Assembly (NCBI GenBank): GCA_051294905.1 | Contig: CM119386.1 | Span: forward strand, 10,478,001-10,542,000 | Direction of reading: 5' to 3' | Source: Botryllus schlosseri | Lineage: Eukaryota | DNA length: 64,000 bases | Shown: positions 2,603 to 30,800 of the stretch, piece after piece | Layout: the number at the start of each line of letters is the position of its first letter | Position numbering within the stretch: position 1 is the stretch's first letter | Program-made: the position numbers and the translations under genes | The notes under the pieces: model-generated | Database searches by the model: none | The model's input: only the letters and a program-made list of their open reading frames with translations | Told to the model about the DNA's origin: nothing

Positions 2603-3802
2603 CCTATTGCCTCGCATCATGTCCAGCCGGCTGGACGGAAAGAAATGCCCGTTGCTACTCTGTCTTCAATACGCGGGTTTCATTTACTATGGCACGGTCA
2701 TACTGCCTTCAACTGGGCGGTGATCTTGTGAGCCTTGAGGATGCAGCCGAGAGAGTAAATTGACTGTCTTTTTTATGTAGTTTTCAAATCAACTTTGGAC
2801 AATCGTACATTTCAGGACTACATTTACAGCACATTCATCGAAGGTACAGGAGATAAATTTTGGGTGGGTGGAACTGATGTTCGGTATGAACAATCATTTG
2901 AATGGACAGATGGGACCCTATTCGACACGACAGTACCGTAAGTTGATCTTGAATTTTTTGACTATCTGTATTTCTTTGATTTTATACGGGATTCAATGTG
3001 TGACGATTGTGACATAATATCGGTCTGCTGGCTTAAATTTCTCCCTCTACTAGTGTACATCTTGAAGAGTTCTCGGCCAGCTGGCATAAAATTACCTTGG
3101 TTGATTATTAAATAAATTAATTATGGGAAGTTATAAGTCAAATATTCATTCAACAAATTATCCCATTACAACGAAATATTTTTCCTAAATCCTCAATCAT
3201 CAATGGAAATTCAATCAATGACAATCATCATGAAAATTTTGTTGAAAAGATTTACTACAAACATAGTGTTTTAATAATAGTTACACATTTCATGAACAAA
3301 TAATAAATATATAGATCCTATAATAACCCAAACTTTTCAAGCACTTCGGAGTAAAAATGTAAAACACCATACAGACACAACAGGCTGACAGATAATAGCA
3401 AAAGTTATTTTTTATTGTAAAAGCTTATTGATGATTATGTCAAAATTCGTAATGTTAAATTTACCCATGAGCCGCCCCATGGAAAGTATCATCCTAAAAG
3501 CTTCAGGTGTACTAAAAATGAGTGTATTGTCTATCATATTGAGATTCCGCATGACTCACTGCCTCTTCATCGTTGCCAGGCTATGGAAATTAGGACAACC
3601 GGACAATGGAGCTGACACGGGGGATGCATCTGTTCAGGAAGACTGCATAGCAATCAATGACGAGTCTACAAATCCAAATTCACGAGGCTCGTGGGATGAC
3701 AACCAATGCGGCAAATCAAGGTGTCTCTTTGTCCTGCTAATTCGTTTTGGGAGCGTTTAGAAATTAGCAACTTGCCATATACAGGGCTTACATATGTGAA
3801 AA
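2603..3802 (+). CDS. CTLD1 (QPD/WDD type); exons 2603-2754, 2816-2937, 3580-3720, start of 3785-3902
   Basis: [13 protein letters not shown]...FWVGGTD...EWTDG...WKLGQPDNG...EDC...[16 protein letters not shown]. Confidence 0.9.
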
Positions 3803-6800: not shown

Positions 6801-9800
6801 AATTCATATTGGGTTATTAACCATACACTATTTCACCTTTTAGGCTGAAAAAACTTGTGAAGATCTATGGAATTCCGAACTTACAGCGATTACGTCTGTC
6901 GAAGAGCAAACCGTTATCAATGACATGAGATTGAAAGTGAACAAAGATATATGGATTGGTCTATCTGATGTTGTAAGTAGCTGTGCGACTATAATTATAA
7001 TGCCCCACCTTCTGATCATGTTTAGTAATAGAGAGAGAGAGAGAGTATTTATTTTCATCCAACTGAAATACATAACAAACAGACAGCAATAATGGTACAG
7101 AAAATACGCATGCACAGTATTCGGTATCTGATAGGAATGATCGATATGACCTTGGAGGTCAATTAGTCTGATTACACCCGCATCAAACAGGTATACTTAT
7201 CTCTATATACAGTATGACTGCAACAAATGTTAGGTAAAAGGGAAAAAAAATAAAATTAAAAGATGGTAACATGCCTTGTATATTATGATATTTCTTTTGT
7301 CTTTGCCACAACTTCTGCTTATTACGAATTGAATGAAATGTAAAAAAGGAGTTTATTTTTGTGGTTACTCTGATATTCAACTCAAAGGCCAATCGTTTGA
7401 TCGAATTCAGATCTATCAAGTTGTCAGTAAAATCCCTACACATGATGACTCTTGTCTAAACAGTTTATAACCTTTGTCAAAACTTGATCTAATTCTGTAT
7501 ATTTTACTGGACTATGCAGTGTCTGTAAACGCCTGTTAGCCGCCATATTTCTTTGAAAATTTTTGAAAAATATATTTGAAAAAGTTGACCACTTATTGTG
7601 TCTTTCTGGTACCTCTATCCAGACAGCATATTTAGAGGTGAAGGTAGCGTTGCTGTAATATATTCTGAACTTTTCCCATATCGTCTTGAAATGTGAAGAT
7701 ATTTCATGATACGATGCGGAACATATTAAACTATTAATCCTCTAAATCCAACTCGTCATGAGTCAATAGCCCGTCATTACGGTTCATATCATCAATAGGA
7801 TACGCCAGGAACTTTACGCTGGAGCAATGGACACGACGTGCTTACCTATACTAATTGGGCGTCAAACGAGCCTACAGCTGTGTAAGTCTGAATATCATTT
7901 CATAATAAGTATGAAATGCCATTATAGGCTATTCAATTTGGTTGGCGTCTTTTGAAAAAATCGAATGAATGTTTTACGATTAAAATTGAAAAATGAATTG
8001 TTAGCACTGTAGAAATGCTGCTCCTGTATGATATATATTGAATAATTGGAAGGCCTATATATGGAACCTCGTTGCATGCACCTAATATTAAAAACAATCC
8101 TATAAGAGAATCATTCCCGATCATCGAAACCATTGTCATATTTACAGAGCTCCTGGTAAAAGCTGTGTCCAGTCAACTGTTGCTACCGATGGACAGTGGA
8201 ATAATGCAGAGTGTACTGACCAAAAGCCATTTATTTGCCGCAAAGGCTTGAGAGGTGAGTCGTACAGTTCTGTCATGTGTTCACAAGTATTCCTATGTTG
8301 TTATTGTTTGAATCCACACTGGCTGCTTTAATGATTGAAGGCTGCAGATAAATCACAGCATGGTATTGCTTGTGTTTGCTCGGTAGTTCCAAGGTGTCTT
8401 TGCCCATACAATATACGGTATATATTGTGATGTGCTATTGGCAATCATTAGGAGACAACGAATAATATTTTGAATAAAGTTTCCATGCTGTTCGACGATG
8501 GATGAGAAAGCCTTGTGGTAGAGTATTCGACTTCTTCATTGGTGGATTGTGGTTACGAGCCGTGACGAAGTCAGGCTAAATAAGACTGTAAAACCGGTAT
8601 ATCCGGCTAACCCACTAGGCAGCTGGCATTCCGGGATAGCATGGAGAGGAGAAATGGTGATCCTGACTCGATACCTTTCCAGTTCCTTGGCATGACTGTC
8701 GCCCAAGCACCTGAAGGCACTGACAAAAATTAACATAGGAGTATATGGTGTTTTCAATGGCTTTTTTTTCAAGCACTGTGATAGCACCCCTAGTCCGACA
8801 AAGTGTTATGTGATTATTTTTATTACAAGTATGTGAACGCAATCAAGTATTGACTGATTTTGTTCAGCTGTGTGTCCTGCCGGTTGGATCTATGGCCACG
8901 GGAAGTGCTATGAATTTATTTTGAATGAAAACTTCTTCCTCTCATGGACGCAAGCATACAAGTATTGTACGGCCCAAAATTCGCGAATGCTGAAAATACA
9001 GAAGTAAGATGAATTTTCCGATAACTACTGGTGTGTATGACAAACTATAGTCTTTGTCCATGAGACTAGAATGTTGATAGCATATTTTATTTATTTTTTG
9101 GGTCTTTTAATCATTTTTGAAGTTGAAAGCATTTATTTTGTAGTGCTTCATATTAAACCTTATTTATAATATGACTCATGTATTCAGTGACGACGAACAG
9201 CATTTTATCTCCTCATTCGGAACAGAGTTATATAAAGAAGGAGTTTTGCAATTGTGGCTTGGTATTTCTGGTAAGTTATTTTGGACAATGCAAGTCGGTG
9301 GAAAATGGTTTTTACTTACTGGTATCTACAGCTTTGAATGTAATGTAAGTCTGTACAACAATTACAGGTAATTGATAAAAAAGCAAAGTCTTTTTAGTGT
9401 CTGTACATGATGAAAAATAAATTGAAAATTGACAAAACAAACCAAAAACAGCAAATTTTAGGCGGTGTATGTAAATTCTTTATTGTAAAACAGCAAGCCC
9501 CCCTTTTCAACAGCTGAAAGCAACAATACTGTATCTTAAAATGCATAATCTATTCAAATATATGTAACAAAAACAGTCAGCCTACCCCCAAAATGTGTTT
9601 TTTGTTCTGGCCAAAGAAGTAAATAGATTTGCAATTCAGCAATAGTCGCTTCAAAATTCATGGTATTCCTTGACCATATTATTTTTTCAGTACTGGAGAT
9701 TGTAGCTTTAGAAAGATGATACCGGTAGTTAAATGTTTTTTACTTGCTTGCTACAATGATACATGCTACATTAGCTGATAATATTCTCTTCACATCATAA

Positions 9801-12800
9801 GGATGCGATCGGTTAGCCACAAGGTACAATAAAGAAGCCTACATACTGCATACATGATTACATAAAATTTGATTCAAGTATCACACTACTTGTACTTTTC
9901 AGTTGCTAACTGTGTTTTGATGATGAATTCAGTCCATTATATTTATAACTAACATCTATAGACCGGAAAACATGATCATCCGATCTCTGTCAGATATCTC
10001 CTGTGTTCAGATATCGGCCATGACCAACAGCTGACGTGGACAGATCAAAGCGCCATTACTTATACACAATGGGATGGAGCACACATCCCTCGAGAAGACC
10101 AAGATGATTGCGCTCAGTTTTACCTCGGAAAGTGTAAGAAAGTCATGTTTACATTGACATGTCAACGAGACTATGCTCAAATTCTAGTTTTGTCCTCTAG
10201 TTTCATGGTAGTGTGCCACCGGTCATTATGGAGTTTTTGTTCTAGAACCACTGACAAAAGCTTGTGGTGTGGAGTTTTCATGATATCACAGTTTTGTTGT
10301 GTTTTGAAATGATAAAAATATAATAAACTGATGCATCCTGGTCAGATGTGACTATTATTTTTAAGAATGATTCATATACCGACTCACTATTGTCCAGATT
10401 GGCCATAAAGTCATTGGAGTGAATGTTATAAAGTAGGCTACAATTTTGCGGGCTCTTCTGCTATTAATAAGTTTATATTTCGGTTCCTACGGTGAGTAGT
10501 AATTTCAAGAAGAATTTATTTAGCACCTTGAGAAGCAGAACATTTTTTCGTGATTTACGCAAAATCTTGTTGTCGATGAGATGTTTTGATCATGATATCC
10601 TCCACCAGATCTACATCATTAGAGGATAGACGCATCCTGTAATTTCTAAAGTCGTCACCCCTTCCCCCGATTATCTGCTAAATGTATGCGACCCATCGAC
10701 CAAACATTCTTTCGAAATTACGTACTTGATTACTATTCCTCATTTTCTACGTCTACTTGCAGCATTTCTAACGTTTCTTAAATAGTGCTGTCACTTGTAA
10801 TTGAGTGGAATCTACGTCGTTACTAATTTGTACTTGAGTAGCAATGCTGACTACTTTAACACCTCTTTATATATGTACAATATACATATCTACCATGTCG
10901 TCTTACCAATATATTTTCATTTCTACAATAATGACTGTTATAGTCATTTAAAGAGAGCTGTTTTATTTAGCTTTATCGAATTGGGAACTTCTCACCTGCT
11001 ACTCGCCACAGGCTTTCGTTTGCGAGGTTACCGAAGGAACGCCGATCTCTGATATTGAAGTGCCGGATGGTTTGTATATAGTTCTTCTACGTGAAAGTGT
11101 ACCCTACAAATCGCACTATTTGTCACTCTGCTATGGAAACCATAGCTTCCCAATGATATTCATTAAATCCATGTAGTGGTATGAAATAGGGCCAATATAC
11201 TTGAACGCTCGAGTAACTTAGGCCTTGTCACGAAACTAGGTAGTGTTTCTTAGCAATTTAGGTCCATGCAAAAGATTAATGTGAATATTTTTGGATATTT
11301 AGACAGTTTTGGTGGCATATTACAGGGGTGTCAAACATACAGTATGCGAGCCGCATTCGGCACGCCACACGATTTCTTCCCGCACGTTTGTAAAAAATGT
11401 TGAGATGTTTCGAAGTAAATACTTCCGTTAAATAGTCCCTCAAGACAGCAAATGTCTAGTATGTTCAAAGGCCGCATTGTAACCACTCGACTGCGGCATT
11501 GTAGTTTCACTCTAGTTACCACTAGGAACAAGCCGGCGACATTGACACCCAATTTCGAGAATGCAAAAAAGTGCACGAACACCGAGTTGATGGTTTTAGG
11601 GAAAACTGTCCAAAACGTAATTATTCACAGAAGTGCAAACTGCAAAACCGCTACATGCAGTTTAGTTACACAAAAATATATTTCAAATATCTGTGGTCAC
11701 ACTGGTGTGTCTCTTCCGACTCTAGAGGTCCCCGGAATGCAGAGAAACCTGAATCGTGATTTATAATAATAAAGAGCTTCTTGGAGGTACAGAACTTCAA
11801 TATACAATTAAATAGTATATTCATATTGAAATGAACCCGAATATTTTCGGCTGACACTCGTCAGGGGTAATCGTCAGCAACTAGTAGAGAATTGGAAAGA
11901 ACATCGTATATCAACAATCGTATCACAAAATATGACGTCACCAGCATGAAATTTCGAATGAGAGAGCGTTCAATGTACTATTTTTAGGTGGTACACGAAC
12001 TCCTTTTGTTGACAGAGTTTTGGTTGGTGTATTTTGATAAAAGTTGATTCCAAGGCACACAAATGGAATTGTGAACGGCCTCGCCCTACGATTCGAAATC
12101 GGTCGTCTCGATAATTATTCGCACAAATCGGATTATCCAACAGATGTTTGCCGATGGCAGAATGCTGATCGATCAAAGGCCATTAATTCTATAAACCTCA
12201 TTCCAACGTCTGCGGATACGGTTAAACCTCTTTTATTCCTCACAACGCTTACACAAGGTGAACGCCAGATTACGACTAAAGCAAGGTAGCATGGAAATAT
12301 GCTAGGGTTACCACACTTCCTCTTTTAAGTGGATTTGTCCTCTTTTTTGACTTTTTTGAAAGTGTCCTCGGTGGACGCCCAAAAGTCCTCTTTTTTGAGA
12401 ATTTTGGTAGGCTAAATATCGGGCCAAATTCGACTGAGATACAGTAAATCAGCACTGAAGTAACGCTCCGGCGGCTATTTCGGGAATTGAACCGGAAAGC
12501 TGACTTTTTTTTTGTCAATCAACCACTCGGTGGGAAAAATTTACCATTTTTTCAGGATTTTCCTCCGGTATTGCAAGTCTAAAAATTTCGAATAAGTGTC
12601 CTCTTCAGATTTCCAAAATATGGTAACCCTAAAATATGCCAACTTTTATGGGTGTTACCGCTGATCATCGTATTTTTATCAACTTCATTGTTCGCGAATA
12701 AAAGAGTCGCTACTTGCAACAAATAAACCCCCTATGATCCGTGATACAATGTAATATCTATGACATATATAATGCTTGATGAGAAAGTAAAGAAAGTGAA

Positions 12801-15800
12801 ATAAGAAAGTAAAAAGCAAGGACGTGGTGCAACATGGAATCAGTTGACTGATGGTGCTGCGGGCCGTGAGCGATTTGAAAGTTTGAATCTGGCCCACGAC
12901 GTACTTTGAGTTTGACATCCCTGGCAAAGGGTTTTTATTTTACTAGTGGCAGCCGGGGCAAGATTTCCGATGAGATAAAAAATTAGGGTATTGTGCGTTA
13001 CTCCTATTGTGCACCATATGTCAATCCATGTCGTGGATTTTTCATTTTCATGCATTGTGCCGACTGTACACAGAGATTTACTGGAAATGTGATGGCAATA
13101 TTGATACTGACAATGCTGATACTGCCGTTATTGGCGATTGGAGATTGCATCCCCCATACTGCTACCTGTTTGGGAGTCAGACCATGCAATGGGAGGAAGC
13201 TGAGGCAGAGTGTGTGAGGCTGGGCGGTCATCTCGCAAGCATTCATAATTCAGATCAACAGTCCTTCATTGCTGGTGAGTGGAGCGCACTTTCACAATTG
13301 CCTACGTGCTATATTCATCAACCTATTCCTTGTCATCGTGTGATAGTCTGGAGGCGACCACCACAGGTTTTACTTAGTTACATTTCTATTTCACAGCACA
13401 TTTATTGGGGCAGACTTGGATCGGTTTGAATGACAAACAACTAGAAGGAACTTATAAATGGACAGACAACACACCCTTTGTAAGTGGTTTATGTATTCGG
13501 GGTACTTAGATCTGAATACTGACTCCAGGGTTATTATCGAATGGACGAGTTGCGACTATCATAACTCTGGAACTAATCGGAACTTCAGAGAGTACAATTT
13601 CTTTACCTAAAATATGCTATATTATACTAAAAACAGACAAATGGTTACTTGATAATCCGCTAAATTACGACGATCATTTGGCTACTGGTAGCTGGTAACT
13701 AATGCAGAGTTCTTTTGTTGCGCAAGAATTTCTCTAACTGGCAACAAGGAGAGCCTAATAATGCCAGTCCTGATGAAAACTGTGTCCATTCGTGGGCTAA
13801 CGAGAATGCGGGATGGAATGACGAAGCTTGCACACGTGGCGACCGAACTTACGTGTGCAAAACCGATGCCGGTGCCTACTAACATACCTCATCATCTGTA
13901 GAGTCACCTGTTCTAATCATGTGTGCTGCATAATCCTGCATTATTGCATGCCATGGTAGCGTTCTTTGACTGACGTAGAGTAGAAATTAACTCGCTTTAA
14001 TTGGTCATGAATTGTAATTGATCGTTTGAAGCCTTCTGCGATCACCCACTACCTCACAAAAGTCACTGTATGAAATAATACTATATCTCTCCATTAAGTA
14101 CCAGTAATTGACTTGATAAGGAAGCCAAAAATGGGAGGAATCAATTGAAAAGCTGTTTTGAAGATATTACTAATCAGATTGCTTGGTTAGTCGTCTTTCA
14201 TATTTTTAGGGATGATATGAGTTTAGGGAGATAGTGTAATGGTGATGCCACCGGCTTCTTGATCAGTAGGTCGTGGGTTCGATCCCCGGCTGGGTCAGAC
14301 CAAAGACTCGAAAACTGGTGTCCGCGGCTATCCTGCTAGGCGCTCAGCAATCACGGATAGCATGGAGGAGAAAAATGGGGGTGCAGACCAGATGACCTTA
14401 CTATAAAGGCCGTATCATATCTCCGTCGTCAAAGCATCACGATGGTGCAGATGAAAAAGAATATCGTCTCTTTCTCTCACTCTCTCTCTCTTCATGTTCT
14501 CATTATCCAGCCAGCTTAAATAGTGAGTGGGTAACGGACTGGCTCTGACATGTAATATATACTGCTTTCTATCAATGTTAGTAAATATTCACCTCATATG
14601 TAAAATAGGAAATCATACATATTTCAAATTCTTTTTGGGATAAGTGTGTCTTAGGAGAGGACAAGACTGTCTGAAAGATTGGTGTAATGGCAATGGCATG
14701 AATAAATGCTTTCATGGCACTGAAACGAATTCAATATTGAATTATATGTCATTGTTCCACGAAAATGACCACATGTTAAGCTAATGTCTCTTCCGTGGAC
14801 AAGAAGAGCAAATAGATGCATATCAGGCATCACAGTAAATATGTAATATGGAAACGGATAATGCTGGTTAATCACAAACGCCGATCCCCGCGACACGTAC
14901 CTCGCATACTCGCATACTTTCCAGAACTTTACTAATTGGAAAGTCGCTAACGTGCCCCAGCCAGATCAGGACGGAGATTGTGTGCGGATCATTGGAGTTG
15001 ATACCGATAATGCGTGGGGCCAGTGGAACGATCGCCCTTGTTCAGAAACAATTCGATTCGCCTGCCAAAAGAACGCCGGTACTGGGCTGCACAGAAACAA
15101 TTCCGCAGCGTGTAGAATCCGCGTGCTTGATCCTGTGACATTAATACTTTAATCGAATTCCTTGAAATTTCAAATCAAGATAAATTAATTTTGCCTTTAT
15201 TGATCGGCCGACAATTGGAATTTGATGAAGAAATTGTAAAAAACAATTATGCTTGGTTGATTGTGACTTGTGAATATGGAATAACTAAATCAATATCCTT
15301 ATAGTGAATGAACTGATGCATATAACAGATTTTGTATGGTCATGGTCATGATCGTTCTCAGTGGGGCAGCTCGAAATATTTTTCACAATAGACGTCCAAT
15401 TTTGTTGTATTTCGAATCCATTACAGCATGAAACGTAGCCCCAAACTCCACATGACACCCACACACTGCACTCAGCATAACCATCTGGAACTTGCATGGT
15501 GTAATCAAATCTTGATTTCAATATCTTGCGGCTCATAACCGTATGCTGAACCTGAATTCTTTTTCAGTACATCTTGCCGAACCTCAGCCAGTGCCTACTC
15601 TACCACGTAAGTCATTTATCGTATATCAAATTAAATACAAGACCGATATACGTATCCGTAGAAATACAAGCATCAAACTACTCAGGTCGATATTTATAAA
15701 CCTTTCCAATGACGTCATCACTCCTGCAAATATTCCAAAGTGACAGATCCTTCGCTACTGCTGGATTGATTTATAAGGACATGGAGCTCACTTCTTGCTG

Positions 15801-18800
15801 AAAATGATAAATAGTTGTGTTTATTGAACTACAATATACGGCTGTTGGGGTTTGATTGTAAATAAAAAAAAGGTTTATCCGGTATATGTTTTTCAAATTA
15901 CCATTGCTAATATATAAGTTCTCATTACAATGATTTTCAACTCTTCTACTCATCCTCACAATCCACTAAATCAGTGAAATATATCATATTGGCCCATTAA
16001 CGTTCAATGAAAAACACCAAGTTTCAACAGAATGATCAAATGAAAATTCATTCGAACAAATGAGAAGGTTGTTGGCTGGATTTTGTCCACAAGATTGAGC
16101 AGCTTATGTCAGCTAATATCAAGTATGTTGTGTAGTTTGAAATTTATGTTAAACAGGGATGAGAATCCTGACTTCCACAACCATGTTGGGGTGAAATAAT
16201 ACATTTTTCATATAACAATATGACAATTTTTGCTGATATGCGGGTATAATGAAGACGCTTGGATGCAAAATGCAGTGTCAGACACATCTTGAAATAACGC
16301 AAGGCCTGAATCATTTCCAAGGTCAATTATCTCCTCACAATTGAGAAAGGAATTAAATTTAGTCTGTAGGGTGTCTACATGCACTTTTAGTTAATCTCTA
16401 ATCTCATCATCCACATCTGACAAACATACGAAACTGTTAAACATCTGAAACTTTACGTCACCAATTGCTCACCTTCTCAACAAATATCAAGGTTTATAGC
16501 AGAACCAGAACTGCTACAATTGTAAGCAAAATGATTAGGTAGAGCTTGTACGCTATTAACCTGTCGAACCCTTGTGTTCTTAACATGATATCTGATGTGA
16601 TATCACTGTATACCATACAAAGACTATTGCCTGCTGAAAGCAGCGTCATGATCCATAGGTTTAAAATCCCTATTGTAAAATGTCACATTCTAATATTAGC
16701 AGAAAATATCGGCTTTATTGCGAAAAGTCTCTTACTTCGGTAACGGCTCAAGATTCCGATATCTGTCTGGGTCTAATTATGCTGTCAACTTTACAGCCGA
16801 CGCGAACACTATTCAGTGTGGCACCGACGGATACTTTCACTACCCTGGGACTAACAAGTGTTATAAAATCGTGCAGGACTATTCAAGGTATAATCGAGCG
16901 AGATAAGTTTTGCGTTTTTTTCCGATATTCATACCAGTATGTGTTGTTACAGAACTTGGCAAGAAGCAAGGTTGGACTGTATGAAGGAAGGCGGTGACTT
17001 GGCCAGCGTTAACTCACCGAGCGAGCAATCTTTCCTTGAATGTAACAAAATGGCTTCATGAATCTCTCATCGGCGGTTGAAATATGTTGATATTTTTTCG
17101 AAGTGAACGCTGCGTTAGCCACGAAACAGATCGCTTTATGGATTGGCGCTGAAGACTCGAAAAGCGGGCTGATCAGCGCGCCTGTGGTTGATATTACGGA
17201 TGGAGGATGGAGGTGGTCTGACGGTTCGCCATTTAACTACATCAACTGGAATCCTGGTAAGCAAAATGATGATATGGTAACACAGTACTTCTAGCTACTT
17301 GACCGTTTTTAGGCACAACTACTTCCTTTTAATACTTCGTATTTTGAAAGTATCAATTGGCTTGGAGATAATTTTGGATTGATTTTGTGTGGTGATATTG
17401 TTGCTAGTGTCCATAAAGACTCGCAATTTGTAGAGCCAGGTCTTAGAATACAAAGATTGAGTTACTTATTCAGATTTATGATCGTCTATTACCATCTTAG
17501 TATAGAATTCAAAGTGTCAGAGAACTGCAATGCTTTTAAAGTGCAAGTCAAACCACTTGACAAAGTTCTTCATTCAAACGCCCATCTCCGCCTAGGGGCC
17601 TCCTGTAGTAAGTAGATGTTAATCAAATGAGATGTGCAAGAAATTCCAAAACGTAGCATACAAATGAACTTTCAATGAAAAGGACCAGATGCTAGTCTGC
17701 ATGAAGTGCAGGTAACTTTGACATGACATACCGTAATTTGGTAGTCTCAGACTCAAGCTAGTATTGATTCATCAACATGCAGCCCGCAACTTCAGTTATG
17801 GTTGTTACTTTAGTATAATGCACGTCATTATATGTGGTGCTTCGAAGCGCTGAATCTATTCTAATTTCCAGGCGAACCTAATAACGTGAACAACGAGGAC
17901 TGTGTTGAAATGCAAGTTTACGGTGGCAGATGGAACGATTTGAAGTGTACCGACTACCGGGGATACATTTGCGAGAAAGTAGACGAGGACTAGTAAGCTA
18001 GCACTCTTTCATCTGCGTAATGTATGAAATAAAACGCCATATCACTTCCCGAATCAATAGCACCAAGCCTACACCAGCATCTAACTTTAATGTCAATTGA
18101 AACTGATTTGATGTGGATACTTTGATTTTACATGTGTAAACCAGTACCCTACAAAGTTTGACGAATTTATCCAGGTAAATAATGTAAATGTTTTTATTGT
18201 ATCATTTTGCTTTAATAGGATAGCAGCGCAGTTCCGTTGACATCATCAATATTGCTTATAGGCATTTGCTAAATAACTACCTGTGGGATGACCTTGTCTT
18301 TTCCTTTGCTTTGCATCAGCTCTACACCTGCGCCTACTAGTGACTGTAATGGGGTTGATTGTTGCTATCGTCATCTCGGTGTAGAAAAAGGTGGAGCTAT
18401 CGGCAACAGGCAGCTGACTGCTTCGTCACAGATGGATAGCGCCTCAGGACCGGACAGAGGCCGGTTGAACACCTACGATCAATACATGTGAGTAGCGCGA
18501 TGTACTACACATTCTCAACTTGTTTCGCCATTCAATTTAAGATGTCAAGGAACAGTGCTCAGACCATAGCCTGTGAATAAATAGAGAATGCTCTTAACCA
18601 ACTAAATCAATCTACGTGAGAGATTGTTGGTGATTATATTTGAGGGATTTTCATATGGAAATGATTCCTTTCCATTGCTTTACATTGTAAAAAGGTATTT
18701 TATTGTTGAATTTACAGGCACATGGGTAGATGTGTACGTGGATTCCTTGGACCTGGTTATTCGAAGGATTAGGGATCTATTGATGTTGATATTGATTGTA

Positions 18801-21800
18801 TTAATGTGTTTATGTATTGGAGGGGGTTTTTGTCGAAACTTCCATTTCGAAATAGAAACCATTTCCTTTTGTAATGACGATTCAATCTCCAAGATTTCTT
18901 CGCTCATTTGTAGTTCAGCAAATCGTAGCACAACACATTGTTCTGTTTCGACTGAAAATGTGATACATTCTCTCATGTAACTCATCGTTCTTCTGGATGA
19001 ATTAGTTGTAAGAAATTAGGACATGTTGCAGTGGATTTTCTCACTTGTGACTCCTGTCAGGCTGCCAAATATCCAGAATTGATCTACAGTGGTGCGCGAT
19101 ATCCCGCTTTGGTTTGCATATTCATTGCTACACGAAATAGAGTGATTGCCGCCTCCCGCTCTGTAGTAATCTTACTTGTAAAAGAAATGACATCTTTCTT
19201 TCTCTTATTTTTATCGTAGCATGCAAAAATGTAGCCTATTCTGACGTATATCACGAGGAAGCTGAAATCTGATTATCGGCTGTAACGCAACTACTTGATC
19301 CGAATGAATTGATGCAACCCCAGAGCGAAATTGGTGGCAACGTCACACGCAAATTTCCATTTAATTACCTGTACTTCATTATTCTATGCAAGAAACCCTT
19401 CTGTCACACACAACTTATTGCTGCAAACCACCACTGTTTCCAGTCTGGATACTACCTTAGTAAACTTGTATACGTATCAACCCCCCCTTTTCTCTTGACT
19501 GGGTACAAGCCTGGTATTAGTGACGATTGCAGAATGAACTATGTATCACAATGATTTTGGCGATAGGCTTGAAGTAAACATTCACGAGCCTTGGCCCTTT
19601 CACTTCGAGTCATTACGGTGTATTCACACTTCAGCCAGCTTGTCAATCTTGGCCCTGGAAAAGGTGGCTGGATCGTGGACGATGATGCACAGAAACAGGA
19701 ACCTCAGTGGATCCAAGTGGATCTGGAAGAATTTTACGAAGTCCGTGGTGTCATAACGCAGGTACCACTGATTGCTGATCAATCGTTCGTAGGTACACTT
19801 TAAAACTCAGTTTCTGTCAGGGTCTAAATGGACTCAGCCAGCCCGTGAATCAAAACAGGTGGACAAAAACGATCTCGGTACAGTACAAGACTCACAAAGA
19901 GGAAGACGTCTGGGAATGGGTTCGTGACTCGTTGGGAAACAAAAAGGTGAGATGACTACGACAAATTGAGAGTAGGGCTGAGCACGATGATTCGAGCATG
20001 GTACTCAAATCTAAATCGAGTATTGATTATCTAGAATCGAGTAGAGTAGTGCGATGTGACTTTTTCAAGTGATGAAATATAACTCTCTTTGCCACATTTC
20101 ATCAACTAGAATTATAGCTTCAATACTTTTTTGTCACCACAGAAGCCTTAAAACCATACCGGCATCCAAAAACACGTAGCACACTTGGATGGAAGCGGCA
20201 TTTCTATGAAGCAGTGATTGATAATCAGCGAAAACACCAAATTCTCTTCAAGTATTATAACTGGGATTGGTTTATTTGTGATCACTAGGTCGATTTTTTT
20301 ACCTAAAAAACGGAAGATTTTTACCCAAAAAATCAAATTTTGACATTTTCGACCTTGAAAAATGTAATTTTGACGAAATTTTGTCCTCATGCATGTAAAA
20401 TATGTTCCCGCACATAATGTTGGAAATGCGCTACTTATCTTCATTTTTTGTTGGAACTGTCTGACCTTGCGAAGTAGTTTGACCTGAAAAAACTTTTTTG
20501 AATTAAAAACCGACAAATTTTTCATGAAAAAACTTTGTTTTACCGAAATCTGGACGGATGAAGAATTCCAGTATTTCGAATTTGTAAACAATTTTGTCAA
20601 TTTTTTGACCCAACACTACAATTTTGACAAAATTGAGACTTATTTTGGCATATAAAAAAAAAACCAACCTATTGATCACATAAAAGTTACATATTTGAAC
20701 TTACCTAGTCAGTCATGCAGTTATGATTTAATAACAAGTGTTATTCGAATCGACTCTAAACCTAATACTCGATTCGGAATCGAGTCTCTCAGGTACTCGG
20801 TTTTGTCCCGCCCCAATCAGTATGCGAATGATCGCGAACCTGAATTTTACTTTCATCTTGCAGATTTTCGATGCCAACCACGATCAAAACACGCAAGTCA
20901 CCAACATATTTGAGCGTCCGGTCATGGCTACAGGAATTCGCATTTACACCGAGTCTTGTCGATTGGGGTGTGCGCTCAGATTTGAAGTCGTGGGATGCAA
21001 GCCACAGTGAGTCTAGTCACAGAAATTTATAATGATGTCACTGTCATTGATCGAATATTTTTTGGATGTTTTTTTCCAGATGCGCAGACTCGTTGGTGGT
21101 TCAGAATGACGGAACTTACCCCGTGGTGCCGGACACGTCGTACGCTGCGTCGTCATCTATGTCTGGTTCGGGGCCTGAGCTGAGCAAATTGGATTATACT
21201 GAATCAAGTAACTCAAAATTAGGATTAGTTACGCTAGACTTGCAGACTGTAAGTGTAATTTTGTGTTCTCTGTGGGTTTGATGGTTGGTACTATCAACAT
21301 AGACCAGCGGTTCTTAACCTGATTTTTTAACTAACCCCACGGGTTTGGTGGAGGTCAAGACACACGCCCGACTCACACAGCAGAATCCACACACATTTGC
21401 AGTAAATATTCGTTATAACATCTTCTGTTTTATGAGAAAATCACGTTTTAATGGTTGTTGCTGACGTTGTTGATGCACAGTTCATTTTATGTACTATTAT
21501 TTTATAGTTATGATATTAGATGTGGTAGTTTTTTTCATAACTCTAAAAATTTTGGGCTCACCACAGGCTTGTCGATTAGTGTAAGGGCTCGCCAGGTAGG
21601 TAAAAGGTTAAAACCACGGAGTAGGTTTTGGTTTATTGCATTACTTTTTCTAGTGGTTATTCTGTGGACAACTTTCATTGGAGAACTAGGGCAAACAGCT
21701 CAACAATATCACATCTGTGTTTATATAACAGCAGGCGCATCAGGATGTTGGAAGCCAGCTACCAACGATAAAAACCAATGGATTCAGCTGGATCTCGGCC

Positions 21801-24800
21801 AGCCGATGAAGGTGCGATACGCCCGTTATAATTTGACCTGGTTCATTTGACTTCCGAATTCTTTGTCTAGATCGCGGGGATCTTGACACAGGGAAATCCG
21901 AGTGCCCAACAATACGTTACTGAATATTACATGCAATTCAGCGATAATGGGGCAACGTTCACGACATATCTCAACACCGACGGGAATTCTCAGGTACGGT
22001 TTAGGTTGGCGTGTTTCTAATCATTCAAGGTAGTGTTGTCAGTGCTGTGATTAGGATATACACTCAAATGAACTCGCTTCCCATGACATGCCGCCCTATT
22101 TCTTGTCGCTTTCTTTTTCTATACCATCTTCTTTACTTTCATTCAGTGTGCATGCCTCCTCTTTACATCGCCTAGGCCAAGGTGGGTGTCAGATTCCATA
22201 GACTACTCCTTGTCGCTTCGACATCTTCCTGTCTTTTCATTGTATCGCATTTTTTGTGGTGTATTGAACTGATAAAATTGCTAATAAACCAATGATGAAA
22301 TGATGATGATGAACTGTCGTTCGCATGTAAATCGGCAAACCTTAACTCAAATGTTTTGTCAGTCAATTGACCATCATCAGCAATGTCATTTGAATGAAAT
22401 GTCACCGAAATGAAACTGAATGTGAACTATTTGTCGCTCTAAGGAACACCGTTGTAAGTTGTCACTTTAATGACCTGTCAATCGAATCAGTTTTCACTCA
22501 GTTCATAGGCTACCCGTTGCGTGCCAATAATGACTACCGTATTTTTATTCATGTGCTGTGCAATTCAAATAGTGAACACTATTGCCTAGGTCAAGTCTAT
22601 AGTCGTGGTGACATTTACAGGAATCCAAATTGTCGGTGACAAAATTACGACAATAATCTGGAAATACCTGAAGAATAAGCGACTCGCTGTGACTGCTTCC
22701 ATTGGTTCTTTTGCAGTTGTTCCCGGCCAATAGGAATCAAAGGTCAATCAGCGAAGGATTTTTACGAGAACCTATCACGACCCGATTTGTACGAATTTCG
22801 CCACAAGCTTGGTATAGCAGCATCGCCCTTCGGTTTGACGTTATCGGCTGCAACAACGAAGGTTGGTACTTCGTATTATCACTTATTCTTGGTTGTTAGC
22901 GAAATATAGGGCGGGGCTCAATGATTCGAGTACTGAAAGGTCATTAAGTAGTATATAAATCGATGAAAATTATAGTTTTGATACTTTTTTCTGCTGTACT
23001 AGCTTAAAAACCTCGTTCGTTCTCATAGTAGCATCCGAAACGTAATTTTTGTGAAGTAGTGATTGTATTACGAGTTGCATTGCGCTTTGTGCAAATGCTG
23101 TATCGAAAATTCCTAAATATCTTGTGATATAATTGGCAACATTTTCCACATGATCACATGAAAGTACACAATTGAACTTTCCAAATCATTCATACTGTTA
23201 TGACATTTATAACGACAGTACTGGAAGCCTAACACTTGATTTGGATCATTCGAGTACTTGATGTTGCTCAGCGACAGCGGTAAATAACTATATTATTCAG
23301 GGCTGAAGTAAAACGTGTTGAAATATTTCTAGTTTTGAAGATCTTCTTGGAGCTACAGAATTGCAATGTACAATTGAATAATATATTGATATTGAATAAA
23401 ACCTGGATATTTCTGGCTGACACTTGCCAGGGGATAATCATCAAGCCGCTAGTGGACCATTTCTATTTTTCTGCAGATCTGGTGACATGCAGTGATACGG
23501 CAGTTGCCAGACCGGACAGTTTCACAGTCGACTGCCCTGCCGGGTGTGATGTCACAACTGCCTCTGTTTACGGAACTGGAGTGTACGCAGAAGCCTCGTC
23601 AATTTGCGCAGCCGCTGTTCACGATGGGAGAATACTAGGTATTTATTTGCGATTTTTTTTAACCAACTGGTGTGGACTTCGCGTGCTGTTTTCTAGCGGA
23701 CCACGGCGGCACCGTAGATGTGAAAAAGACCACTGGCAAACAAAGTTACACAGGGTCATATGGTCATGGCGTGTCGTCGCAAGATTATGACAGCTCGGAA
23801 AATTCGTTCATTTTTCAAGGTACGGTAGTTGTGTTTGCTCGATTACAGAAGTACTTGACCTAGGGGCGCAAGAAGACTGTTTATTTGAGATTATGACAAT
23901 ATGGAGTCAGTGCTACCATGCATATTTAACCAAATCCCGCTGACATTGTTATCAAGATCTATAATTAACAATTTGGTACTCTGATCGATAACTTCCTTGG
24001 TGTCCTTTGGAATTTGCATCCAGTTTTTCTGTTTGTGGCTCGCAAGCCAGGTGATATGTTTTTGATGCCTTGTTCACAGCTGCGCAGTGCGCAGTCACTT
24101 GCTAGGCAAAGTGCTGATCGGTAAATTTCCCAATATGTCAGAATCCCGGTCTGCATTCTAGAAAACAATAGTTATTCCGTGCTAGCTTTCTTCACGAATC
24201 CAGTCCAATAAAACTCTGAATAATCATCCGTACACGGAAATCTGCTTTTATTAAATCGTCACTGCTACTCTGGTGCGACTTCGACTATACTACTTGAACT
24301 GTGTCACCGACTACAAGTCCGGCGCAACTAAAAATGCCGAACCGGACCAAGACGCACTCTGGACTGCAGATCCCGCTACTAACTACACAGTTAAATTGAA
24401 TCATGCTGAAAAAAGCGAATATGAAATGTTGGCAATGTGCAGTATACTCTCCTGTGTCTTACTGGGAAAGATGGTATGTTTCGCTCGCAATGTGTCTAAT
24501 GTGGCACCTTGGTAGCGCATACAAGTTGCGAACTTGTATGAGTGTTTCACTAAGAGACAAGGTTGTATAGGGCATCTCAATAGAAAATATGTCACCATCA
24601 AGAGGACCATCACTGTATTGCCATACTGTATGCAAAACAGGACTTTTTTTGTCTGCTACACTTGGAGAAGAAATAATGAATATTGTTGTTCACTCATTCC
24701 ATCAACGCGTCTTCACCAATTCTTGATACTGCTATGACACTCCGAAGGTGAAATTGGTCCTCTCTTATGACGCACGGTACTTAAAATTTATTTGCCGACC

Positions 24801-27800: not shown

Positions 27801-30800
27801 AGAGTCTAAAGAAACTTATTGAAAATATTGATAAAATGCGTACTAAAAATCGATTAAACTTTCTACTTAGTATATCTCACTATGATAATTCTAAGACAGT
27901 GGTGCTCAAACCGAGAGGCGTGCCCCCTTGGAGGCGTGAAAGCATCTGAAGGGGGCGCTCTGCTCAGCCCAGCTGAAAAAATACACTTCGTAGTTATTCC
28001 TCTGTATTTAGTATGAATTTCATATTTGAAAATCTCTCATCCACAGTCGTAAATTTCCATGCCATCATACCATCAAACTATCCGTTAGGTTTGCTAGCAT
28101 CCTGATTGCGTCTTGTGATATGACAATATGGGGGACGTGAAATATTTCCCAATTATAAGGGGGGAGGGGGCGAATCTAAAAAAGTATGGGGACCACTGTT
28201 CTGAGGTAAATACTTCCTGTATATTATTTTCTATGTTTAATTTCTGGCCCACGCAGTCTCAAAGGTTTCAACTGCTCAACATCAAAGAAATCCTATTGAC
28301 ATGATTCGGATCACGAGTGGGATTTCAGATTGGCCACTCCAGTTTTAATTATTTTAATGATGTGCATATAAAACACGATTGACGCGCCTCTTAGGTAGAT
28401 CCGTTCTCTGTATTGTCTGTAGAATTGAGATATTTATATTTTATCTACACATAGTAAAAGTGTGTTTGAAGCTAACATGGTCATGATGCTGTCAGCATTG
28501 TGTGTCCTGGAATGAACCAAAAGTGGAATTAGTAAATCTATGAACAGATCGCTGCTCGCGGATTTAAATTTCAATCCTGGTCTAAGAATCGGGACAACCA
28601 ACTTTCATCACTATAGTTTTGACAAATGGGTTACTGAGGCCGACCAGCCTATGAAATCTCGCCGTTATGTTTCTGACGCGTGTACGATATCACCAAAAAA
28701 TGTTTGGTTTGTTTCAAATAAGCACATATATTGTCTCCAAATCCAAATTTTATATAGTGCGGCCCGCGAATGGATTTAGATGTTGAATGCGGCCCGCGAG
28801 CTCAAAAGTTTGCCCACCCCTGATTTAGAGCGAAGCGCCTCTATTATACTTGGTCTAAAGTAATGACATTCAGTCACCACTATCATAATCTGTGGTAGAA
28901 TGCAGGCTGATGACCATTTTCAGTCATCATATTCCTGAATCTTGCATTCAGTGTGCCTGTAGTGTTAGGGTGCTGCCAACCATTTTCCCCTGACAGAGGA
29001 TGCCGCGAGGTTAACAAGGAACCGCTCGGTGTACAAGGAACTATTCCGTTTTAGAAATGTTAATTTTGTGGTTATGATTACGCTTGGGAGAAGTTTTGTG
29101 TTTATAAAGTCACCTGCTGAAGTTTGAATATCGTTTTGCATTGGGTTGCTTGCTGAAATGCCAGTCGATCACACCATTGAATTTTCCGATTAATGATTTG
29201 GTATTGTATGGAGTATTTGCAAACATGAGCAAGGCAACCCCTTCGAAACAAATTTTATGGAAAACTTTCTTCTGTATGCCCTTGCCATATATATGCTTCT
29301 GATGTCTTTGGTCATTTTTACAGGGGAGTCGGTGGTCACCTGGCCGCAATCAACACGATCTACGAGCAGATGTTTTTACTGAGTCAAATTGCGGAAGCCA
29401 CCCACTCTTCGGACGACGAGAAATTCTGGATCGGACTCGGGGCTTACATCAACCCCAACAGCGACGCACTGGACTACAAGTGGTCTACCGGCGAACCTGT
29501 TACGTTTACGGCATGGGATCAAAATCAGCCGAGTGAGACATTCTCTATAGCTGGCTGAAGAACGTGGCTGATAATGGTGGTATTAAAATCTCTTTTCACA
29601 GACATCCAACACACTTGCTCATTCCCTTTCCTTTACAACGGAATCGAATATTACAGTTGCATTGAAGAAGGAAGAATTTATGATCGATTTGGTAGGTTAT
29701 GTGACAGCTTCGGTTTTACTAATGCTTTGTATGTTGCAGTAATTCCATATAGGGACTGTCGTCGTAGCGAGTCAATCAAGGTAGAAGGTGTCGAAGCATA
29801 CAACTGTCACTATCCATCCCTAACCTATCCAGACCACTCTTTTAACTATACCCTTAACTAACCCTAATCACAATCTAACTTCTAGTCTTGTGGTTTTCAA
29901 ACTATTTTGTCTCATAACCCCTTATCAAGCTCAATATTTTTTACCCTAGAATTAACGTTGTCTCCAAGGAGTGAAGTCAGCCACTTTTAGATCCTCAGCA
30001 GTCTATGCTAATGAAACCTATTCTGGATGCCTCGCTATTATTATACTCTCTATTTTGACACTGTGCTAATGGGAATGACTCATTATTTTGGACCAATCGA
30101 TATTGTCAGAGTGTTTACAGGCTTTTACGGCTGTTGCAATTATATGCATTGCTGGCCAAAGTCTAAGTCGCCGAATTAGAGCTAATTTGAGTAGTCCGCT
30201 TCCGTACGCATAGAATAGACCGCATCTAGCTTTTCTCATTCAAAACTGCCTTGTGACAGGACCTTGGTGCTCCGCCGAACCCGTCTTCAACAACCATTTT
30301 GTCTTGTGCAACGGATGGTCCGACAGTCAAGTAGGTTGTTTCAGAATGGACAGTGTCACAGGACTGTGGTCGCAAGGGCAGCCAGTTGCCTGTGGATCTG
30401 ATGCTTACAAGTATGTGTGTGAATTCTTTCGTACCCGGGTCATTTTAATTTGCAAATCAAGATTAAAATTCTTCAGGCTTCCGACTGTTTTTCGCTAGTT
30501 TGATTAATCTGCCCGGATTAGAATAATATAATCCCAATCAGACATGGGGTAATCGCGATTAGTAATCGTAATCGATTACGACGATTACAGCATTTTCAAG
30601 TAATCGTAATCGCAATCGATTACATTCGGAAAAATTCCGAAGTAATCGTAATCGACTACTTCCCATTTCTGATCGATTTCTTTGTGAAAGAACGATTACT
30701 TTTATTTGTACAAGGAATATGACATAAACTGAACATTCGTGAGCAAGGAAGATGTATTATACAAGGTTCAAACGTCTGATTTTTAAATGTCATTGCTCAT

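What the first reader, a model, noticed from the sequence alone, without database searches (positions are those of the whole stretch)
13727..15078. Mutually exclusive exons that swap a mannose-type (EPN) for a galactose-type (QPD) binding loop in the same lectin domain
Seen in the sequence: two homologous exons both encode the second half of CTLD4 (NFxNW...C...WND..C...(Y/F)xC..xA), and both enter in phase 0 and leave in phase 1. Including both gives an immediate stop (g|AA CTT TAC TAA), and skipping both shifts the frame, so exactly one must be used. Exon A carries EPN..E-N-C/WND and exon B carries QPD/WND, and both are free of stops with all Cys intact despite strong divergence. Established: EPN versus QPD is the classic determinant of mannose/fucose/GlcNAc versus galactose/GalNAc preference in Ca-dependent CTLDs. 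Inference: one receptor gene switches the sugar specificity of a single domain by splicing, a small Dscam-like diversification of an innate pattern-recognition receptor. I do not know of this in the mannose receptor family. Caveat: exon B has DGDC instead of ExC and lacks the Trp/Gly-rich loop of ASGPR, so its real ligand is uncertain.
Basis: partly seen in the sequence, partly recalled or inferred. Interest (0 to 1): 0.9.

Follow-up and report, generated by a model that had tools for sequence, protein, structure and literature searches.

The report
Splice-switched binding half of a lectin domain
Assembled RNA shows that a large invertebrate multi-lectin receptor gene uses one or the other of two alternative exons, never both, to build the sugar-binding half of its fourth lectin domain, so one gene makes two receptors with different binding loops.

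Summary
Exon A (13727-13871, EPN/WND) and exon B (14925-15078, QPD/WND) each match the last 40 positions of Pfam Lectin_C. Both enter in phase 0 and leave in phase 1. Joining both gives a stop three codons into B, and skipping both shifts the frame.

Spliced RNA contigs from three public runs settle the usage:
- one run carries only up>A;
- one carries only up>B>down, in a single 1708-nt contig;
- one carries both forms as a bubble, at depth 50 against 19.

No A>B joint and no skip-both joint was seen.

Exon B is conserved in a relative: 48 of 51 residues match, against 31 of 59 in the translated flanking intron.

The sugar reading is only partly supported. Exon A is a complete collectin/MBP-type mannose site. 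Exon B belongs to a distinct short-loop CTLD subtype ([QE]P[DNS]-x-DG[DN]C ... AWGxWND). It lacks the canonical Glu, and its third motif residue varies among relatives (D/N/S), so "galactose-type" is unproven.

A crinoid (Anneissia japonica) MRC1-like gene has an analogous frame-enforced exon pair (EPN against RPD) in NCBI's annotated isoforms. I found no paper describing such a switch, and the scan had not noted this on other DNA.

The parts
13074..13274 (+). Constant exon 1 of CTLD4. It encodes the N-terminal Cys pair, beta1, alpha1 and the start of alpha2 (...[21 protein letters not shown]).
   Evidence: RNA contigs in X1, X2 and X6 cover 13073-13273 and join 13274>13397. Translation. The ag acceptor is at 13072-13073.
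13397..13479 (+). Constant exon 2 of CTLD4 ([27 protein letters not shown]). It ends in phase 0 and has a strong donor, TTT|gtaagt. It is the common donor for both alternative exons.
   Evidence: Joints 13479>13727 (X1, X2) and 13479>14925 (X2, X6). Pfam Lectin_C profile positions 41-62.
13727..13871 (+). Alternative exon A (145 nt). It encodes the C-terminal half of CTLD4 with a complete canonical mannose-type Ca/sugar site: EPN, Glu two residues before the Cys (DENC), and WND. Its donor is weak (CCG|gtgcct).
   Evidence: Pfam Lectin_C positions 68-107, 27.5 bits. Aligns to collectin-11 and MBP through EPNNA..E(D/N)C..WND. Joints 13479>13727 and 13870/1>15567/8 at depth 50 in X2 and 19.6 in X1; depth 0 in X6.
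13872..14924 (+). Intron between the two alternative exons (1053 nt). It contains a high-copy repeat at about 14228-14440. It is long enough that steric hindrance cannot explain the exclusivity.
   Evidence: for the sequence. One search gives depth in the thousands on 14228-14418 in all runs, with many variant letters and loose ends, as expected of a dispersed repeat. No tRNA and no Rfam match.
14925..15078 (+). Alternative exon B (154 nt). It encodes the C-terminal half of CTLD4 with a short-loop QPD-QDGDC motif, an acidic/aromatic insertion ([10 protein letters not shown]) and WND. Its donor is weak (CCG|gtactg).
   Evidence: Pfam Lectin_C positions 68-107, 25.4 bits. Joints 13479>14925 and 15077/8>15567/8 in X2 (depth 19.2) and in X6 (a 1708-nt contig, depth 29.6); depth 0 in X1. 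A relative keeps 48 of 51 residues (P0001).
15568..15606 (+). Constant linker exon. Its first two bases (ta) complete a Val codon begun by the last base (g) of exon A or exon B; the rest encodes [12 protein letters not shown]. It is the common acceptor for both alternative exons.
   Evidence: Joints from 13871 and from 15078 into 15568, and 15606>16797 onward into CTLD5. Reading frames.

Best explanation
Exons A and B are a real pair of mutually exclusive exons in a mosaic multi-CTLD receptor gene on the + strand.

Both are spliced between the same donor (13479) and the same acceptor (15568). Each supplies the whole ligand-facing half of the fourth C-type lectin domain: the second part of the long loop region, the Ca site-2 residues, strands beta3 to beta5, and three of the domain's Cys. 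The first half of the domain stays constant.

Exclusivity is enforced at least by the reading frame. The exons are 145 and 154 nt, so both together or neither gives a premature stop, and such transcripts would be expected to go to nonsense-mediated decay. Both alternative exons have weak 5' splice sites, unlike their constitutive neighbours, which fits regulated choice.

The choice is switch-like between samples. The result is two receptor isoforms:
- One has a canonical collectin-like EPN/Glu/WND mannose-type site.
- The other has a conserved but non-canonical short-loop QPD-xDGDC...AWGxWND surface.

Shown: the exon anatomy, the frames, the junctions, sample-dependent use, and conservation of exon B.
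Inferred: nonsense-mediated decay as the enforcer, regulated (tissue or stage) choice, and a change of ligand.
Not settled: what exon B binds. Galactose-type is possible but unproven.
For: - Anatomy and frames.
- Both exons match Lectin_C positions 68-107 above the gathering score.
- Spliced RNA contigs. X1 has 13479>13727 with no cover on B. X6 has one 1708-nt contig running e1 - up - B - linker - CTLD5, with no cover on A. X2 has A (depth 50) and B (depth 19.2) as two short contigs, each with 27-28 nt of the shared flanks. Those flanks lie at depth 48.7 and 55.3. No 13871>14925 joint and no 13479>15568 joint appears in any run.
- Of the 14 'RNA?' runs that hold parts of the gene, only X2, X6, X7 and X8 hold exon B words. 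X3 and X31, from the same study as X2, hold none.
- Constraint on exon B: the relative's reading frame P0001 keeps 48 of 51 residues without gaps. The translated flanking intron keeps 31 of 59, with a 6-residue gap in the alignment and two stop codons in the window's frame.
- A second copy, P0003, is 67% identical with the same exon borders.
- In a homologous gene in contig L002, a B-type exon is the only third exon found for a CTLD with the same first two intron positions and phases; its exit intron is also phase 1, one codon later.
- Exon A aligns to collectin-11 and MBP through every Ca site-2 ligand.
- Weak donors on A and B against gtaag or gtgag on five of the seven flanking constitutive exons.
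- Independent analogue: Anneissia japonica MRC1-like isoforms X1 and X2 differ only in the second half of a CTLD. That half comes from two tandem 128-nt exons, which are also frame-incompatible together.
Against: - The RNA evidence comes from assembled contigs, which drop rare variants. 'A only' and 'B only' therefore mean dominant, not absolute.
- Run metadata are coded, so tissue, stage or challenge dependence is not shown.
- The one raw-read run I laid (X24) had no reads on the gene.
- X6 comes from a different haplotype, with several SNPs including T>C at 13479, the last base of the shared donor exon. Genotype-dependent choice is therefore not excluded.
- I could not check conservation of exon A in relatives (one search found nothing).
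- Exon B lacks the canonical Glu at Cys-2 and the Trp/Gly-rich loop of galactose receptors.
- No structure model of either spliced domain could be made, because a spliced sequence has no reference in these tools.
Confidence: 0.8

Rival explanations
1. On/off switch rather than a change of sugar. Exon B gives a CTLD4 that no longer binds sugar through the canonical Ca site 2. It would be a protein- or other-ligand-binding or purely structural variant. Splicing would then toggle the lectin activity of this one domain rather than change mannose to galactose.
For: - In B, the Glu two residues before the Cys is Gly.
- The loop between the tripeptide and the Cys has 4 residues instead of 7.
- In an ungapped alignment with exon A, the EPN position reads NVP.
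- Relatives vary at the third tripeptide residue: QPD, QPN, QPS.
- The best solved match is weak, at E 5e-4.
Against: - WND is retained.
- The unit [QE]P[DNS]-x-DG[DN]C is conserved across distant animals, with acidic residues well placed to replace the Glu.
- The conserved D-x-D-(D/N)-A-W-G insertion looks like a metal or sugar-stacking element.
- Short-loop cousins carry EPN in the same position (P0006).
Confidence: 0.3
2. Genotype-dependent splicing. The choice of A or B is fixed by cis polymorphisms in individual animals or strains rather than regulated by tissue, stage or stimulus.
For: - The B-only contig of X6 differs from the window at several sites in e1 and in exon B. It also has C instead of T at 13479, the last base of the shared donor exon.
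- All three runs of study P3 hold exon B with the same 0.82 share of words.
Against: - X2 carries both isoforms in one run, on contigs identical to the window in exons A and B (0 other letters).
- A -1 donor change should not bias the choice between two downstream acceptors.
- Both exons are intact in one haplotype, and B is conserved in a relative.
Confidence: 0.12
3. Artefact. The B-containing or A-containing contigs are assembly chimeras or come from genomic DNA or pre-mRNA in the libraries.
For: - The runs are only guessed to be RNA ('RNA?').
- Low-depth intronic contigs (depth 2-3.5) exist in X1 and X2.
Against: - The contigs are spliced at exact GT..AG borders through eight or more consecutive introns.
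- Depth on the exons is 5-20 times that on the introns.
- The same B junctions appear in two independent studies, X2 and X6.
Confidence: 0.02

Closest known systems
FGFR2 IIIb/IIIc (own knowledge of the vertebrate FGF receptor literature)
   Same: Two tandem, homologous, mutually exclusive exons encode the C-terminal half of one extracellular ligand-binding domain. The choice is switch-like between cell types and changes ligand specificity while the rest of the receptor is unchanged.
   Different: FGFR2 uses an Ig fold and protein ligands, and its choice is governed by known splicing regulators (ESRP, PTB, Fox). Here the fold is a C-type lectin domain and the regulators are unknown. Here the frame makes double inclusion and double skipping non-productive.
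Dscam1 exon 4/6/9 clusters of insects (own knowledge; mentioned in PMC13428168)
   Same: Mutually exclusive exons encode half of an extracellular recognition domain in a receptor that is linked to immunity.
   Different: Dscam has 12 to 48 variants per cluster, with docking-site and selector RNA pairing. Here there are only two variants, and I found no convincing intronic pairing.
Anneissia japonica (crinoid) macrophage mannose receptor 1-like, isoforms X1 (XP_033107416.1) and X2 (XP_033107417.1)
   Same: - It is a multi-CTLD receptor.
- The two annotated isoforms, both 2100 aa, differ only in the second half of one CTLD.
- That half is encoded by two tandem exons of equal length (128 nt, ag/gt).
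- Both exons together, or neither, break the frame.
- The swap changes the tripeptide: EPN against RPD.
- The exit intron has the same position and phase as in the window.
   Different: - It affects the first CTLD in that protein, not the fourth.
- The entry intron has a different position and phase (phase 2, one residue before the Trp), so the origin is probably independent.
- The two exons are 46% identical, against 27% here.
- It is known only as an automatic annotation, and I did not check RNA for it.
EPN/QPD specificity rule of Ca-dependent CTLDs (MBP-A, ASGPR; own knowledge, restated in PMC5379193)
   Same: Exon A has EPN, Glu and WND exactly as in MBP and collectin-11. Exon B has QPD and WND.
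   Different: The rule was established for domains with the canonical loop length and the Glu two residues before the Cys. Exon B has a 3-residue shorter loop with Gly at that position. It lacks the Trp/Gly-rich loop. Its homologues show QPN and QPS, so the rule cannot simply be applied.
Vertebrate mannose receptor family (MRC1, MRC2, PLA2R1, LY75)
   Same: A chain of many CTLDs, of which only some keep a sugar site. An FNII module is present. The best full-length database hits are named MRC1-like.
   Different: The architecture is mosaic: at least two F5/8C domains, an LCCL domain, a trefoil domain and Cys-rich repeats. The FNII module lies mid-gene rather than before CTLD1. I found no report of mutually exclusive exons in the vertebrate family.

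Membership tests
C-type lectin-like domain (Pfam PF00059) | Sequence match to the domain profile above the curated threshold | tested here: met
   Exon A scores 27.5 bits and exon B 25.4 bits (cut-off 22.6), both on profile positions 68-107. The constant exon matches positions 41-62.
C-type lectin-like domain (Pfam PF00059) | Conserved Cys framework and WIGL motif, with the domain completed by either exon | tested here: met
   The constant half has the N-terminal Cys pair, the alpha1 Cys and WIGL. Each alternative exon supplies the three remaining Cys (ENC/GDC, EAC/RPC, YVC/FAC).
Mannose-type Ca-dependent CRD (exon A) | EPN tripeptide, Glu two residues before the Cys, and Asn-Asp of WND (the five Ca site-2 ligands) | tested here: met
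   [12 protein letters not shown]...GWNDEAC aligns without loop-length change to collectin-11 (GEPNNAYDEEDC...GWNDVAC) and human MBP. Binding itself was not tested.
Galactose-type Ca-dependent CRD (exon B) | QPD tripeptide and WND | tested here: met
   PQPDQDGDC...QWNDRPC.
Galactose-type Ca-dependent CRD (exon B) | Glu two residues before the Cys, canonical loop length, and an aromatic/Gly-rich loop after QPD as in ASGPR/MGL | tested here: not met
   The residue at Cys-2 is Gly. There are four residues between QPD and the Cys, against seven in exon A and MBP. No Trp follows QPD. Relatives have QPN or QPS.
Mutually exclusive exon pair | Tandem homologous exons with the same entry and exit phase | tested here: met
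   Both exons enter in phase 0 and leave in phase 1. Both match the same Pfam positions.
Mutually exclusive exon pair | Transcripts contain one or the other, and neither both nor none | tested here: met
   All four expected joints are seen. No A>B joint and no skip-both joint is seen in X1, X2 or X6. This is contig-level evidence, so rare forms could be missed.
Mutually exclusive exon pair | Regulated (tissue, stage or stimulus) choice | not testable with these tools
   Sample-dependent use is seen, but run metadata are coded and only one read-laying run was allowed.
Mannose receptor family (MRC1/MRC2/PLA2R1/LY75) | N-terminal ricin-type Cys-rich domain, then one FNII, then 8-10 CTLDs, a transmembrane segment and a short tail, with no other modules | tested here: not met
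   Pfam finds partial F5/8C matches below the gathering score (20735-21007, 22693-22896), LCCL (23284-23787), fn2 at 29559-29858 (mid-gene) and Trefoil (48894-49106). The ricin-type domain was not looked for.

The most novel reading that the evidence does not exclude
Frame-enforced mutually exclusive splicing of the ligand-facing half of a C-type lectin domain may be a recurrent strategy of invertebrate multi-CTLD receptors. It appears to have arisen independently here and in a crinoid. It would let one receptor gene present alternative glycan-recognition surfaces in different cells or conditions. Here the swap joins halves from two anciently separated CTLD subtypes: a collectin-like EPN half and a short-loop QPx-DGDC half that is also found in a tunicate and in an unidentified animal host.
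Probability: 0.5. Interest if true: 0.75.

Novelty: new variant of a known kind. Interest (0 to 1): 0.68.

Why it matters
C-type lectin receptors are usually thought to diversify by gene and domain duplication. Here a single domain's binding surface is exchanged by splicing. RNA evidence supports it, and a relative shows evolutionary constraint on the non-canonical exon.

This gives a clean natural experiment. The two isoforms share the same scaffold half, the same receptor and the same genome, and differ only in two very different binding loops. That makes it directly testable how the C-terminal half of a CTLD alone sets ligand choice, and what the widespread but uncharacterised short-loop QPx-DGDC subtype binds.

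The independent crinoid case suggests that annotation pipelines already hold more such pairs that nobody has examined. A systematic search for same-length isoform pairs in CTLD genes could show how common the trick is in animals that lack adaptive immunity.

Tried and rejected
- **Own annotated protein or close full-length orthologues.** I never retrieved them.
  - phmmer with exon B gave only genomic reading frames and distant multi-CTLD proteins of at most 66% local identity.
  - Word-index searches with the exon B frame, the exon A frame and a template-plus-fragments alignment found P0001 only, nothing, and only distant proteins.
  - So I could not check exon A in relatives or the annotated isoforms of this gene.
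- **Raw-read run X24.** It had no reads on the gene, only on the intronic repeat.
- **RNA pairing that could enforce exclusivity.** I found only five short, imperfect inverted repeats, none convincing.
- **Rbfox-type TGCATG sites.** They lie at 13945 and 15493, but the density is about what the window average predicts, so this is a lead only.
- **The repeat at about 14228-14440.** It is not a tRNA gene by ARAGORN and nothing in 13300-15800 matches Rfam.
- **Other hidden alternative lectin half-exons in this gene.** tblastn with A and B found one second-half exon per CTLD elsewhere in the window.
- **Other isoform sets among homologues.** Triplophysa, Cherax, Amphiura, Polyodon and Penaeus gave no further mutually exclusive pair. 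Cherax shows plain loss of half a CTLD in one isoform.
- **Is the constant half specifically akin to B-type genes?** Its identity to L002 (45-46%) is no higher than to a fish MRC1 CTLD (44.8%). I therefore dropped the claim that B is the ancestral partner.
- **ESM Atlas look-up of exon B.** It gave only generic lectin fragments.
- **Species.** It stays coded. Amphioxus is my guess, and nothing in the report rests on it. The guess rests on notes on 19 genome pieces, a Ciona sequence as the nearest named B-type match, and a hybrid-type second organism label.
Full report
**1. What is in the sequence**

The window carries a large multi-exon gene on the + strand. It encodes many C-type lectin-like domains (CTLDs); a motif scan finds CTLD pieces from about 2,600 to 48,200. 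Spliced RNA contigs define the exons of the fourth CTLD:
- 13074-13274, constant
- 13397-13479, constant; ends in phase 0 after ...[21 protein letters not shown]
- exon A, 13727-13871
- exon B, 14925-15078
- a linker exon, 15568-15606
- the four exons of the next CTLD: 16797-16887, 16953-17041, 17104-17256 and 17872-17992

Exon A reads [48 protein letters not shown]. Exon B reads [51 protein letters not shown].

Each exon alone passes the Pfam Lectin_C gathering score on the same profile positions, 68-107 of 107 (27.5 and 25.4 bits). The two are only 27% identical to each other.

Their lengths are 145 and 154 nt, so both enter in phase 0 and leave in phase 1. In silico splicing gives these outcomes:
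- A-only and B-only stay open through the next domain.
- A+B stops three codons into B.
- Skipping both shifts the frame and stops 53 codons later.

**2. Are both exons used, and exclusively?**

Among public runs of the same organism label, 14 probable RNA runs hold parts of 11000-18500. Only X2 (all sampled words) and X6, X7 and X8 (0.82 of the words) hold exon B. X3 and X31, from X2's study, hold none.

I laid contigs of X1, X2 and X6, and raw reads of X24, on 12700-18400:
- **X1:** a 1428-nt contig joins 13274>13397 and 13479>13727 (depth 19.6). There is no cover at all on exon B.
- **X6:** one 1708-nt contig (depth 29.6) runs e1 - up - exon B - linker - next CTLD, with joints at 13478/9>14925 and 15077/8>15567/8. 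There is no cover on exon A.
- **X2:** the assembly forms a bubble. A 199-nt contig holds exon A plus 28 and 27 nt of the shared flanking exons (depth 50). A 208-nt contig holds exon B with the same flanks (depth 19.2). The shared flanks lie at depth 48.7 and 55.3.
- **X24:** no reads on the gene.

All joints sit on GT..AG. No 13871>14925 joint and no 13479>15568 joint appears in any run.

The limits are that contigs drop rare forms and that run metadata are coded.

**3. Is exon B maintained by selection?**

phmmer of exon B against 1.84 billion representatives gave 34 hits. The three best are short.
- **P0001** is a reading frame called straight through genomic DNA of a relative (Logan assembly of SRR25569784). 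It matches exon B at 48 of 51 residues without gaps. The 59 residues of translated intron before the exon match at only 31 of 59, with a 6-residue gap in the alignment and two stop codons in the window's frame. The exon is therefore much better kept than its surroundings.
- **P0003**, from the same sample, is a second copy. It is 67% identical, has the same exon borders (..FQ|NFTNW ... A|G) and carries QPN instead of QPD.
- **P0005** is a Ciona intestinalis protein (XP_026695561.1). It is 58% identical and carries QPS.

A further B-type exon lies in contigs from five JGI metagenome samples, evidently host animal DNA (L002-L006). There a CTLD shares the window's first two intron positions and phases, and its exit intron is also phase 1, one codon later. 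Its third exon is B-type (DFFNWEFDQPNGDGNC...NNAWGMWNDQDC). No A-type exon is detectable in the 0.8-kb intron before it or the 3.8 kb after it.

B-type halves are therefore a real and old CTLD variety, not a decaying duplicate. I could not test conservation of exon A in relatives.

**4. What the swap changes**

The alternative exon encodes the second part of the long loop region, all Ca site-2 residues, strands beta3-beta5 and three of the Cys. That is the whole ligand-facing half. This follows from what is established about the CTLD fold.

Exon A aligns to collectin-11 and human MBP with no change in loop length. It has EPN, the Glu two residues before the Cys, and WND. It is a complete mannose-type site by sequence.

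Exon B is different:
- Only four residues lie between QPD and the Cys (QPD-QDGD-C), against seven in exon A and MBP.
- The residue two before the Cys is Gly.
- There is a longer, acidic and aromatic stretch before WND ([10 protein letters not shown]).
- In an ungapped alignment with exon A, QPD lies three residues past the EPN position.
- Within B's own subfamily the conserved unit is [QE]P[DNS]-x-DG[DN]C ... G-x-D-x-D-(D/N)-A-W-G-x-WND, with 3 or 6 residues between the NW and the tripeptide.
- A short-loop cousin (P0006) carries EPN-GDGNC and EPS-RDGDC. The tripeptide therefore probably does sit at the metal site, and the DGD residues may replace the Glu. This is inference.

Because relatives show D, N or S at the third position, and because the best solved match is only mosGCTL-3 at E 5e-4, the classic 'QPD = galactose' rule cannot be applied with confidence.

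The same protein already has a more canonical QPD...EDC...WDD domain in a constant exon (3389-3757).

**5. How exclusivity is likely achieved**

- The intron between A and B is 1053 nt, so steric hindrance is out.
- All sites are GT-AG, so there is no U2/U12 incompatibility.
- I found no convincing docking/selector pairing.
- What the sequence does show is the frame rule and weak donors on both alternative exons: CCG|gtgcct and CCG|gtactg. Five of the seven flanking constitutive exons have gtaag or gtgag.

The most likely mechanism is regulated competition between two weak exons, with nonsense-mediated decay removing double or null products. The decay step and the regulators are inferred.

**6. 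Context**

The gene is not an orthodox mannose-receptor-family member. Pfam finds F5/8 type C pieces, an LCCL domain, an FNII module in the middle of the gene and a trefoil domain near the 3' end. The FNII and trefoil hits partly confirm earlier notes s1-286580 and s1-286687.

**7. An independent analogue**

While looking up names I found that two NCBI isoforms of an Anneissia japonica MRC1-like protein, both 2100 aa, differ only at residues 105-146. One reads QWNNGEPNNYGSGEDC...KWND and the other FWLPGRPDSLNGNEDC...MWND.

In the genomic locus L001 these residues come from two tandem exons, 7589-7716 and 8375-8502. Each is 128 nt with ag/gt borders, and they lie between a phase-2 donor at 6293 and an acceptor at 9290. 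Both exons together, or neither, break the frame, as in the window.

The exit intron matches the window's in position and phase. The entry intron does not, and the affected domain is the first CTLD in that protein. Independent origin is therefore likely. This pair is known only as an automatic annotation, and I did not check RNA for it.

**8. Literature**

Seven full-text searches combined mutually exclusive exons, C-type lectin/CTLD/CRD, EPN/QPD, mannose receptor, amphioxus and tandem exon duplication. None returned a paper describing mutually exclusive exons inside a CTLD. The two papers I opened mention only Dscam or bare event counts. The library lacks most subscription journals, so this is absence in what could be searched.

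**9. Verdict**

The exon pair and its mutually exclusive, sample-dependent use are real. The consequence is a wholesale exchange of the binding half of one CTLD: a canonical mannose-type site against a conserved, non-canonical short-loop type. The 'galactose' label for exon B is unproven.

The closest functional analogue is FGFR2 IIIb/IIIc. It is a new variant of a known kind, of clear interest to lectin and splicing specialists, and directly testable.

Noticed in passing
L001:7589-7716 and L001:8375-8502 (Anneissia japonica, GCA_011630105.1 VUNX01032905.1): Two tandem 128-nt exons encode alternative second halves (EPN against RPD) of a CTLD in an MRC1-like gene. They correspond to NCBI isoforms X2 and X1. 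Both together, or neither, break the frame.
   Followed up: partly
window 14228-14440 (intron between exons A and B): High-copy dispersed repeat that looks tRNA-derived to the eye (..GTGGGTTCGATCCCC..). Depth is in the thousands in every RNA run, with many variants. ARAGORN and Rfam find nothing.
   Followed up: partly
window 3389-3757: A constant exon of an upstream CTLD carries QPD, then a long loop, then EDC and WDD. This is a more canonical galactose-type arrangement than exon B, and it sits in the same protein.
   Followed up: no
window 20735-21007, 22693-22896, 23284-23787, 29559-29858, 48894-49106: The gene is a mosaic. Between and after the CTLDs there are partial F5/8 type C matches (below the Pfam cut-off), an LCCL domain (E 1.8e-13), an fn2 module (E 1.2e-6) and a trefoil domain (E 1.6e-11).
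   Followed up: partly
L002:932-2552 (JGI metagenome 3300001463; the same contig is in four other samples, L003-L006): Host animal DNA in metagenomes carries a homologous CTLD. It shares the window's first two intron positions and phases, and its exit intron is also phase 1, one codon later. A B-type exon (QPN-GDGNC...AWGMWND) is the only third exon found. A DDE transposase-like frame lies in the following intron.
   Followed up: partly
window 13479: The B-only contig of run X6 has C instead of T at the last base of the shared upstream exon. The change is synonymous (Phe) and sits at position -1 of the donor. It is probably just a haplotype marker, but it lies at the splice site that feeds both alternative exons.
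   Followed up: no
P0041 against P0042 (Cherax quadricarinatus MRC1 isoforms X1 and X2): Isoform X2 lacks 53 residues that cover the second half of one CTLD (GEPTGGGENC...WNDIPC...). The binding half is skipped rather than swapped.
   Followed up: no
window 13945 and 15493: TGCATG (Rbfox-type) motifs lie 74 nt downstream of exon A and 75 nt upstream of the shared acceptor. The density is about that of the whole window, so this is only a lead.
   Followed up: partly
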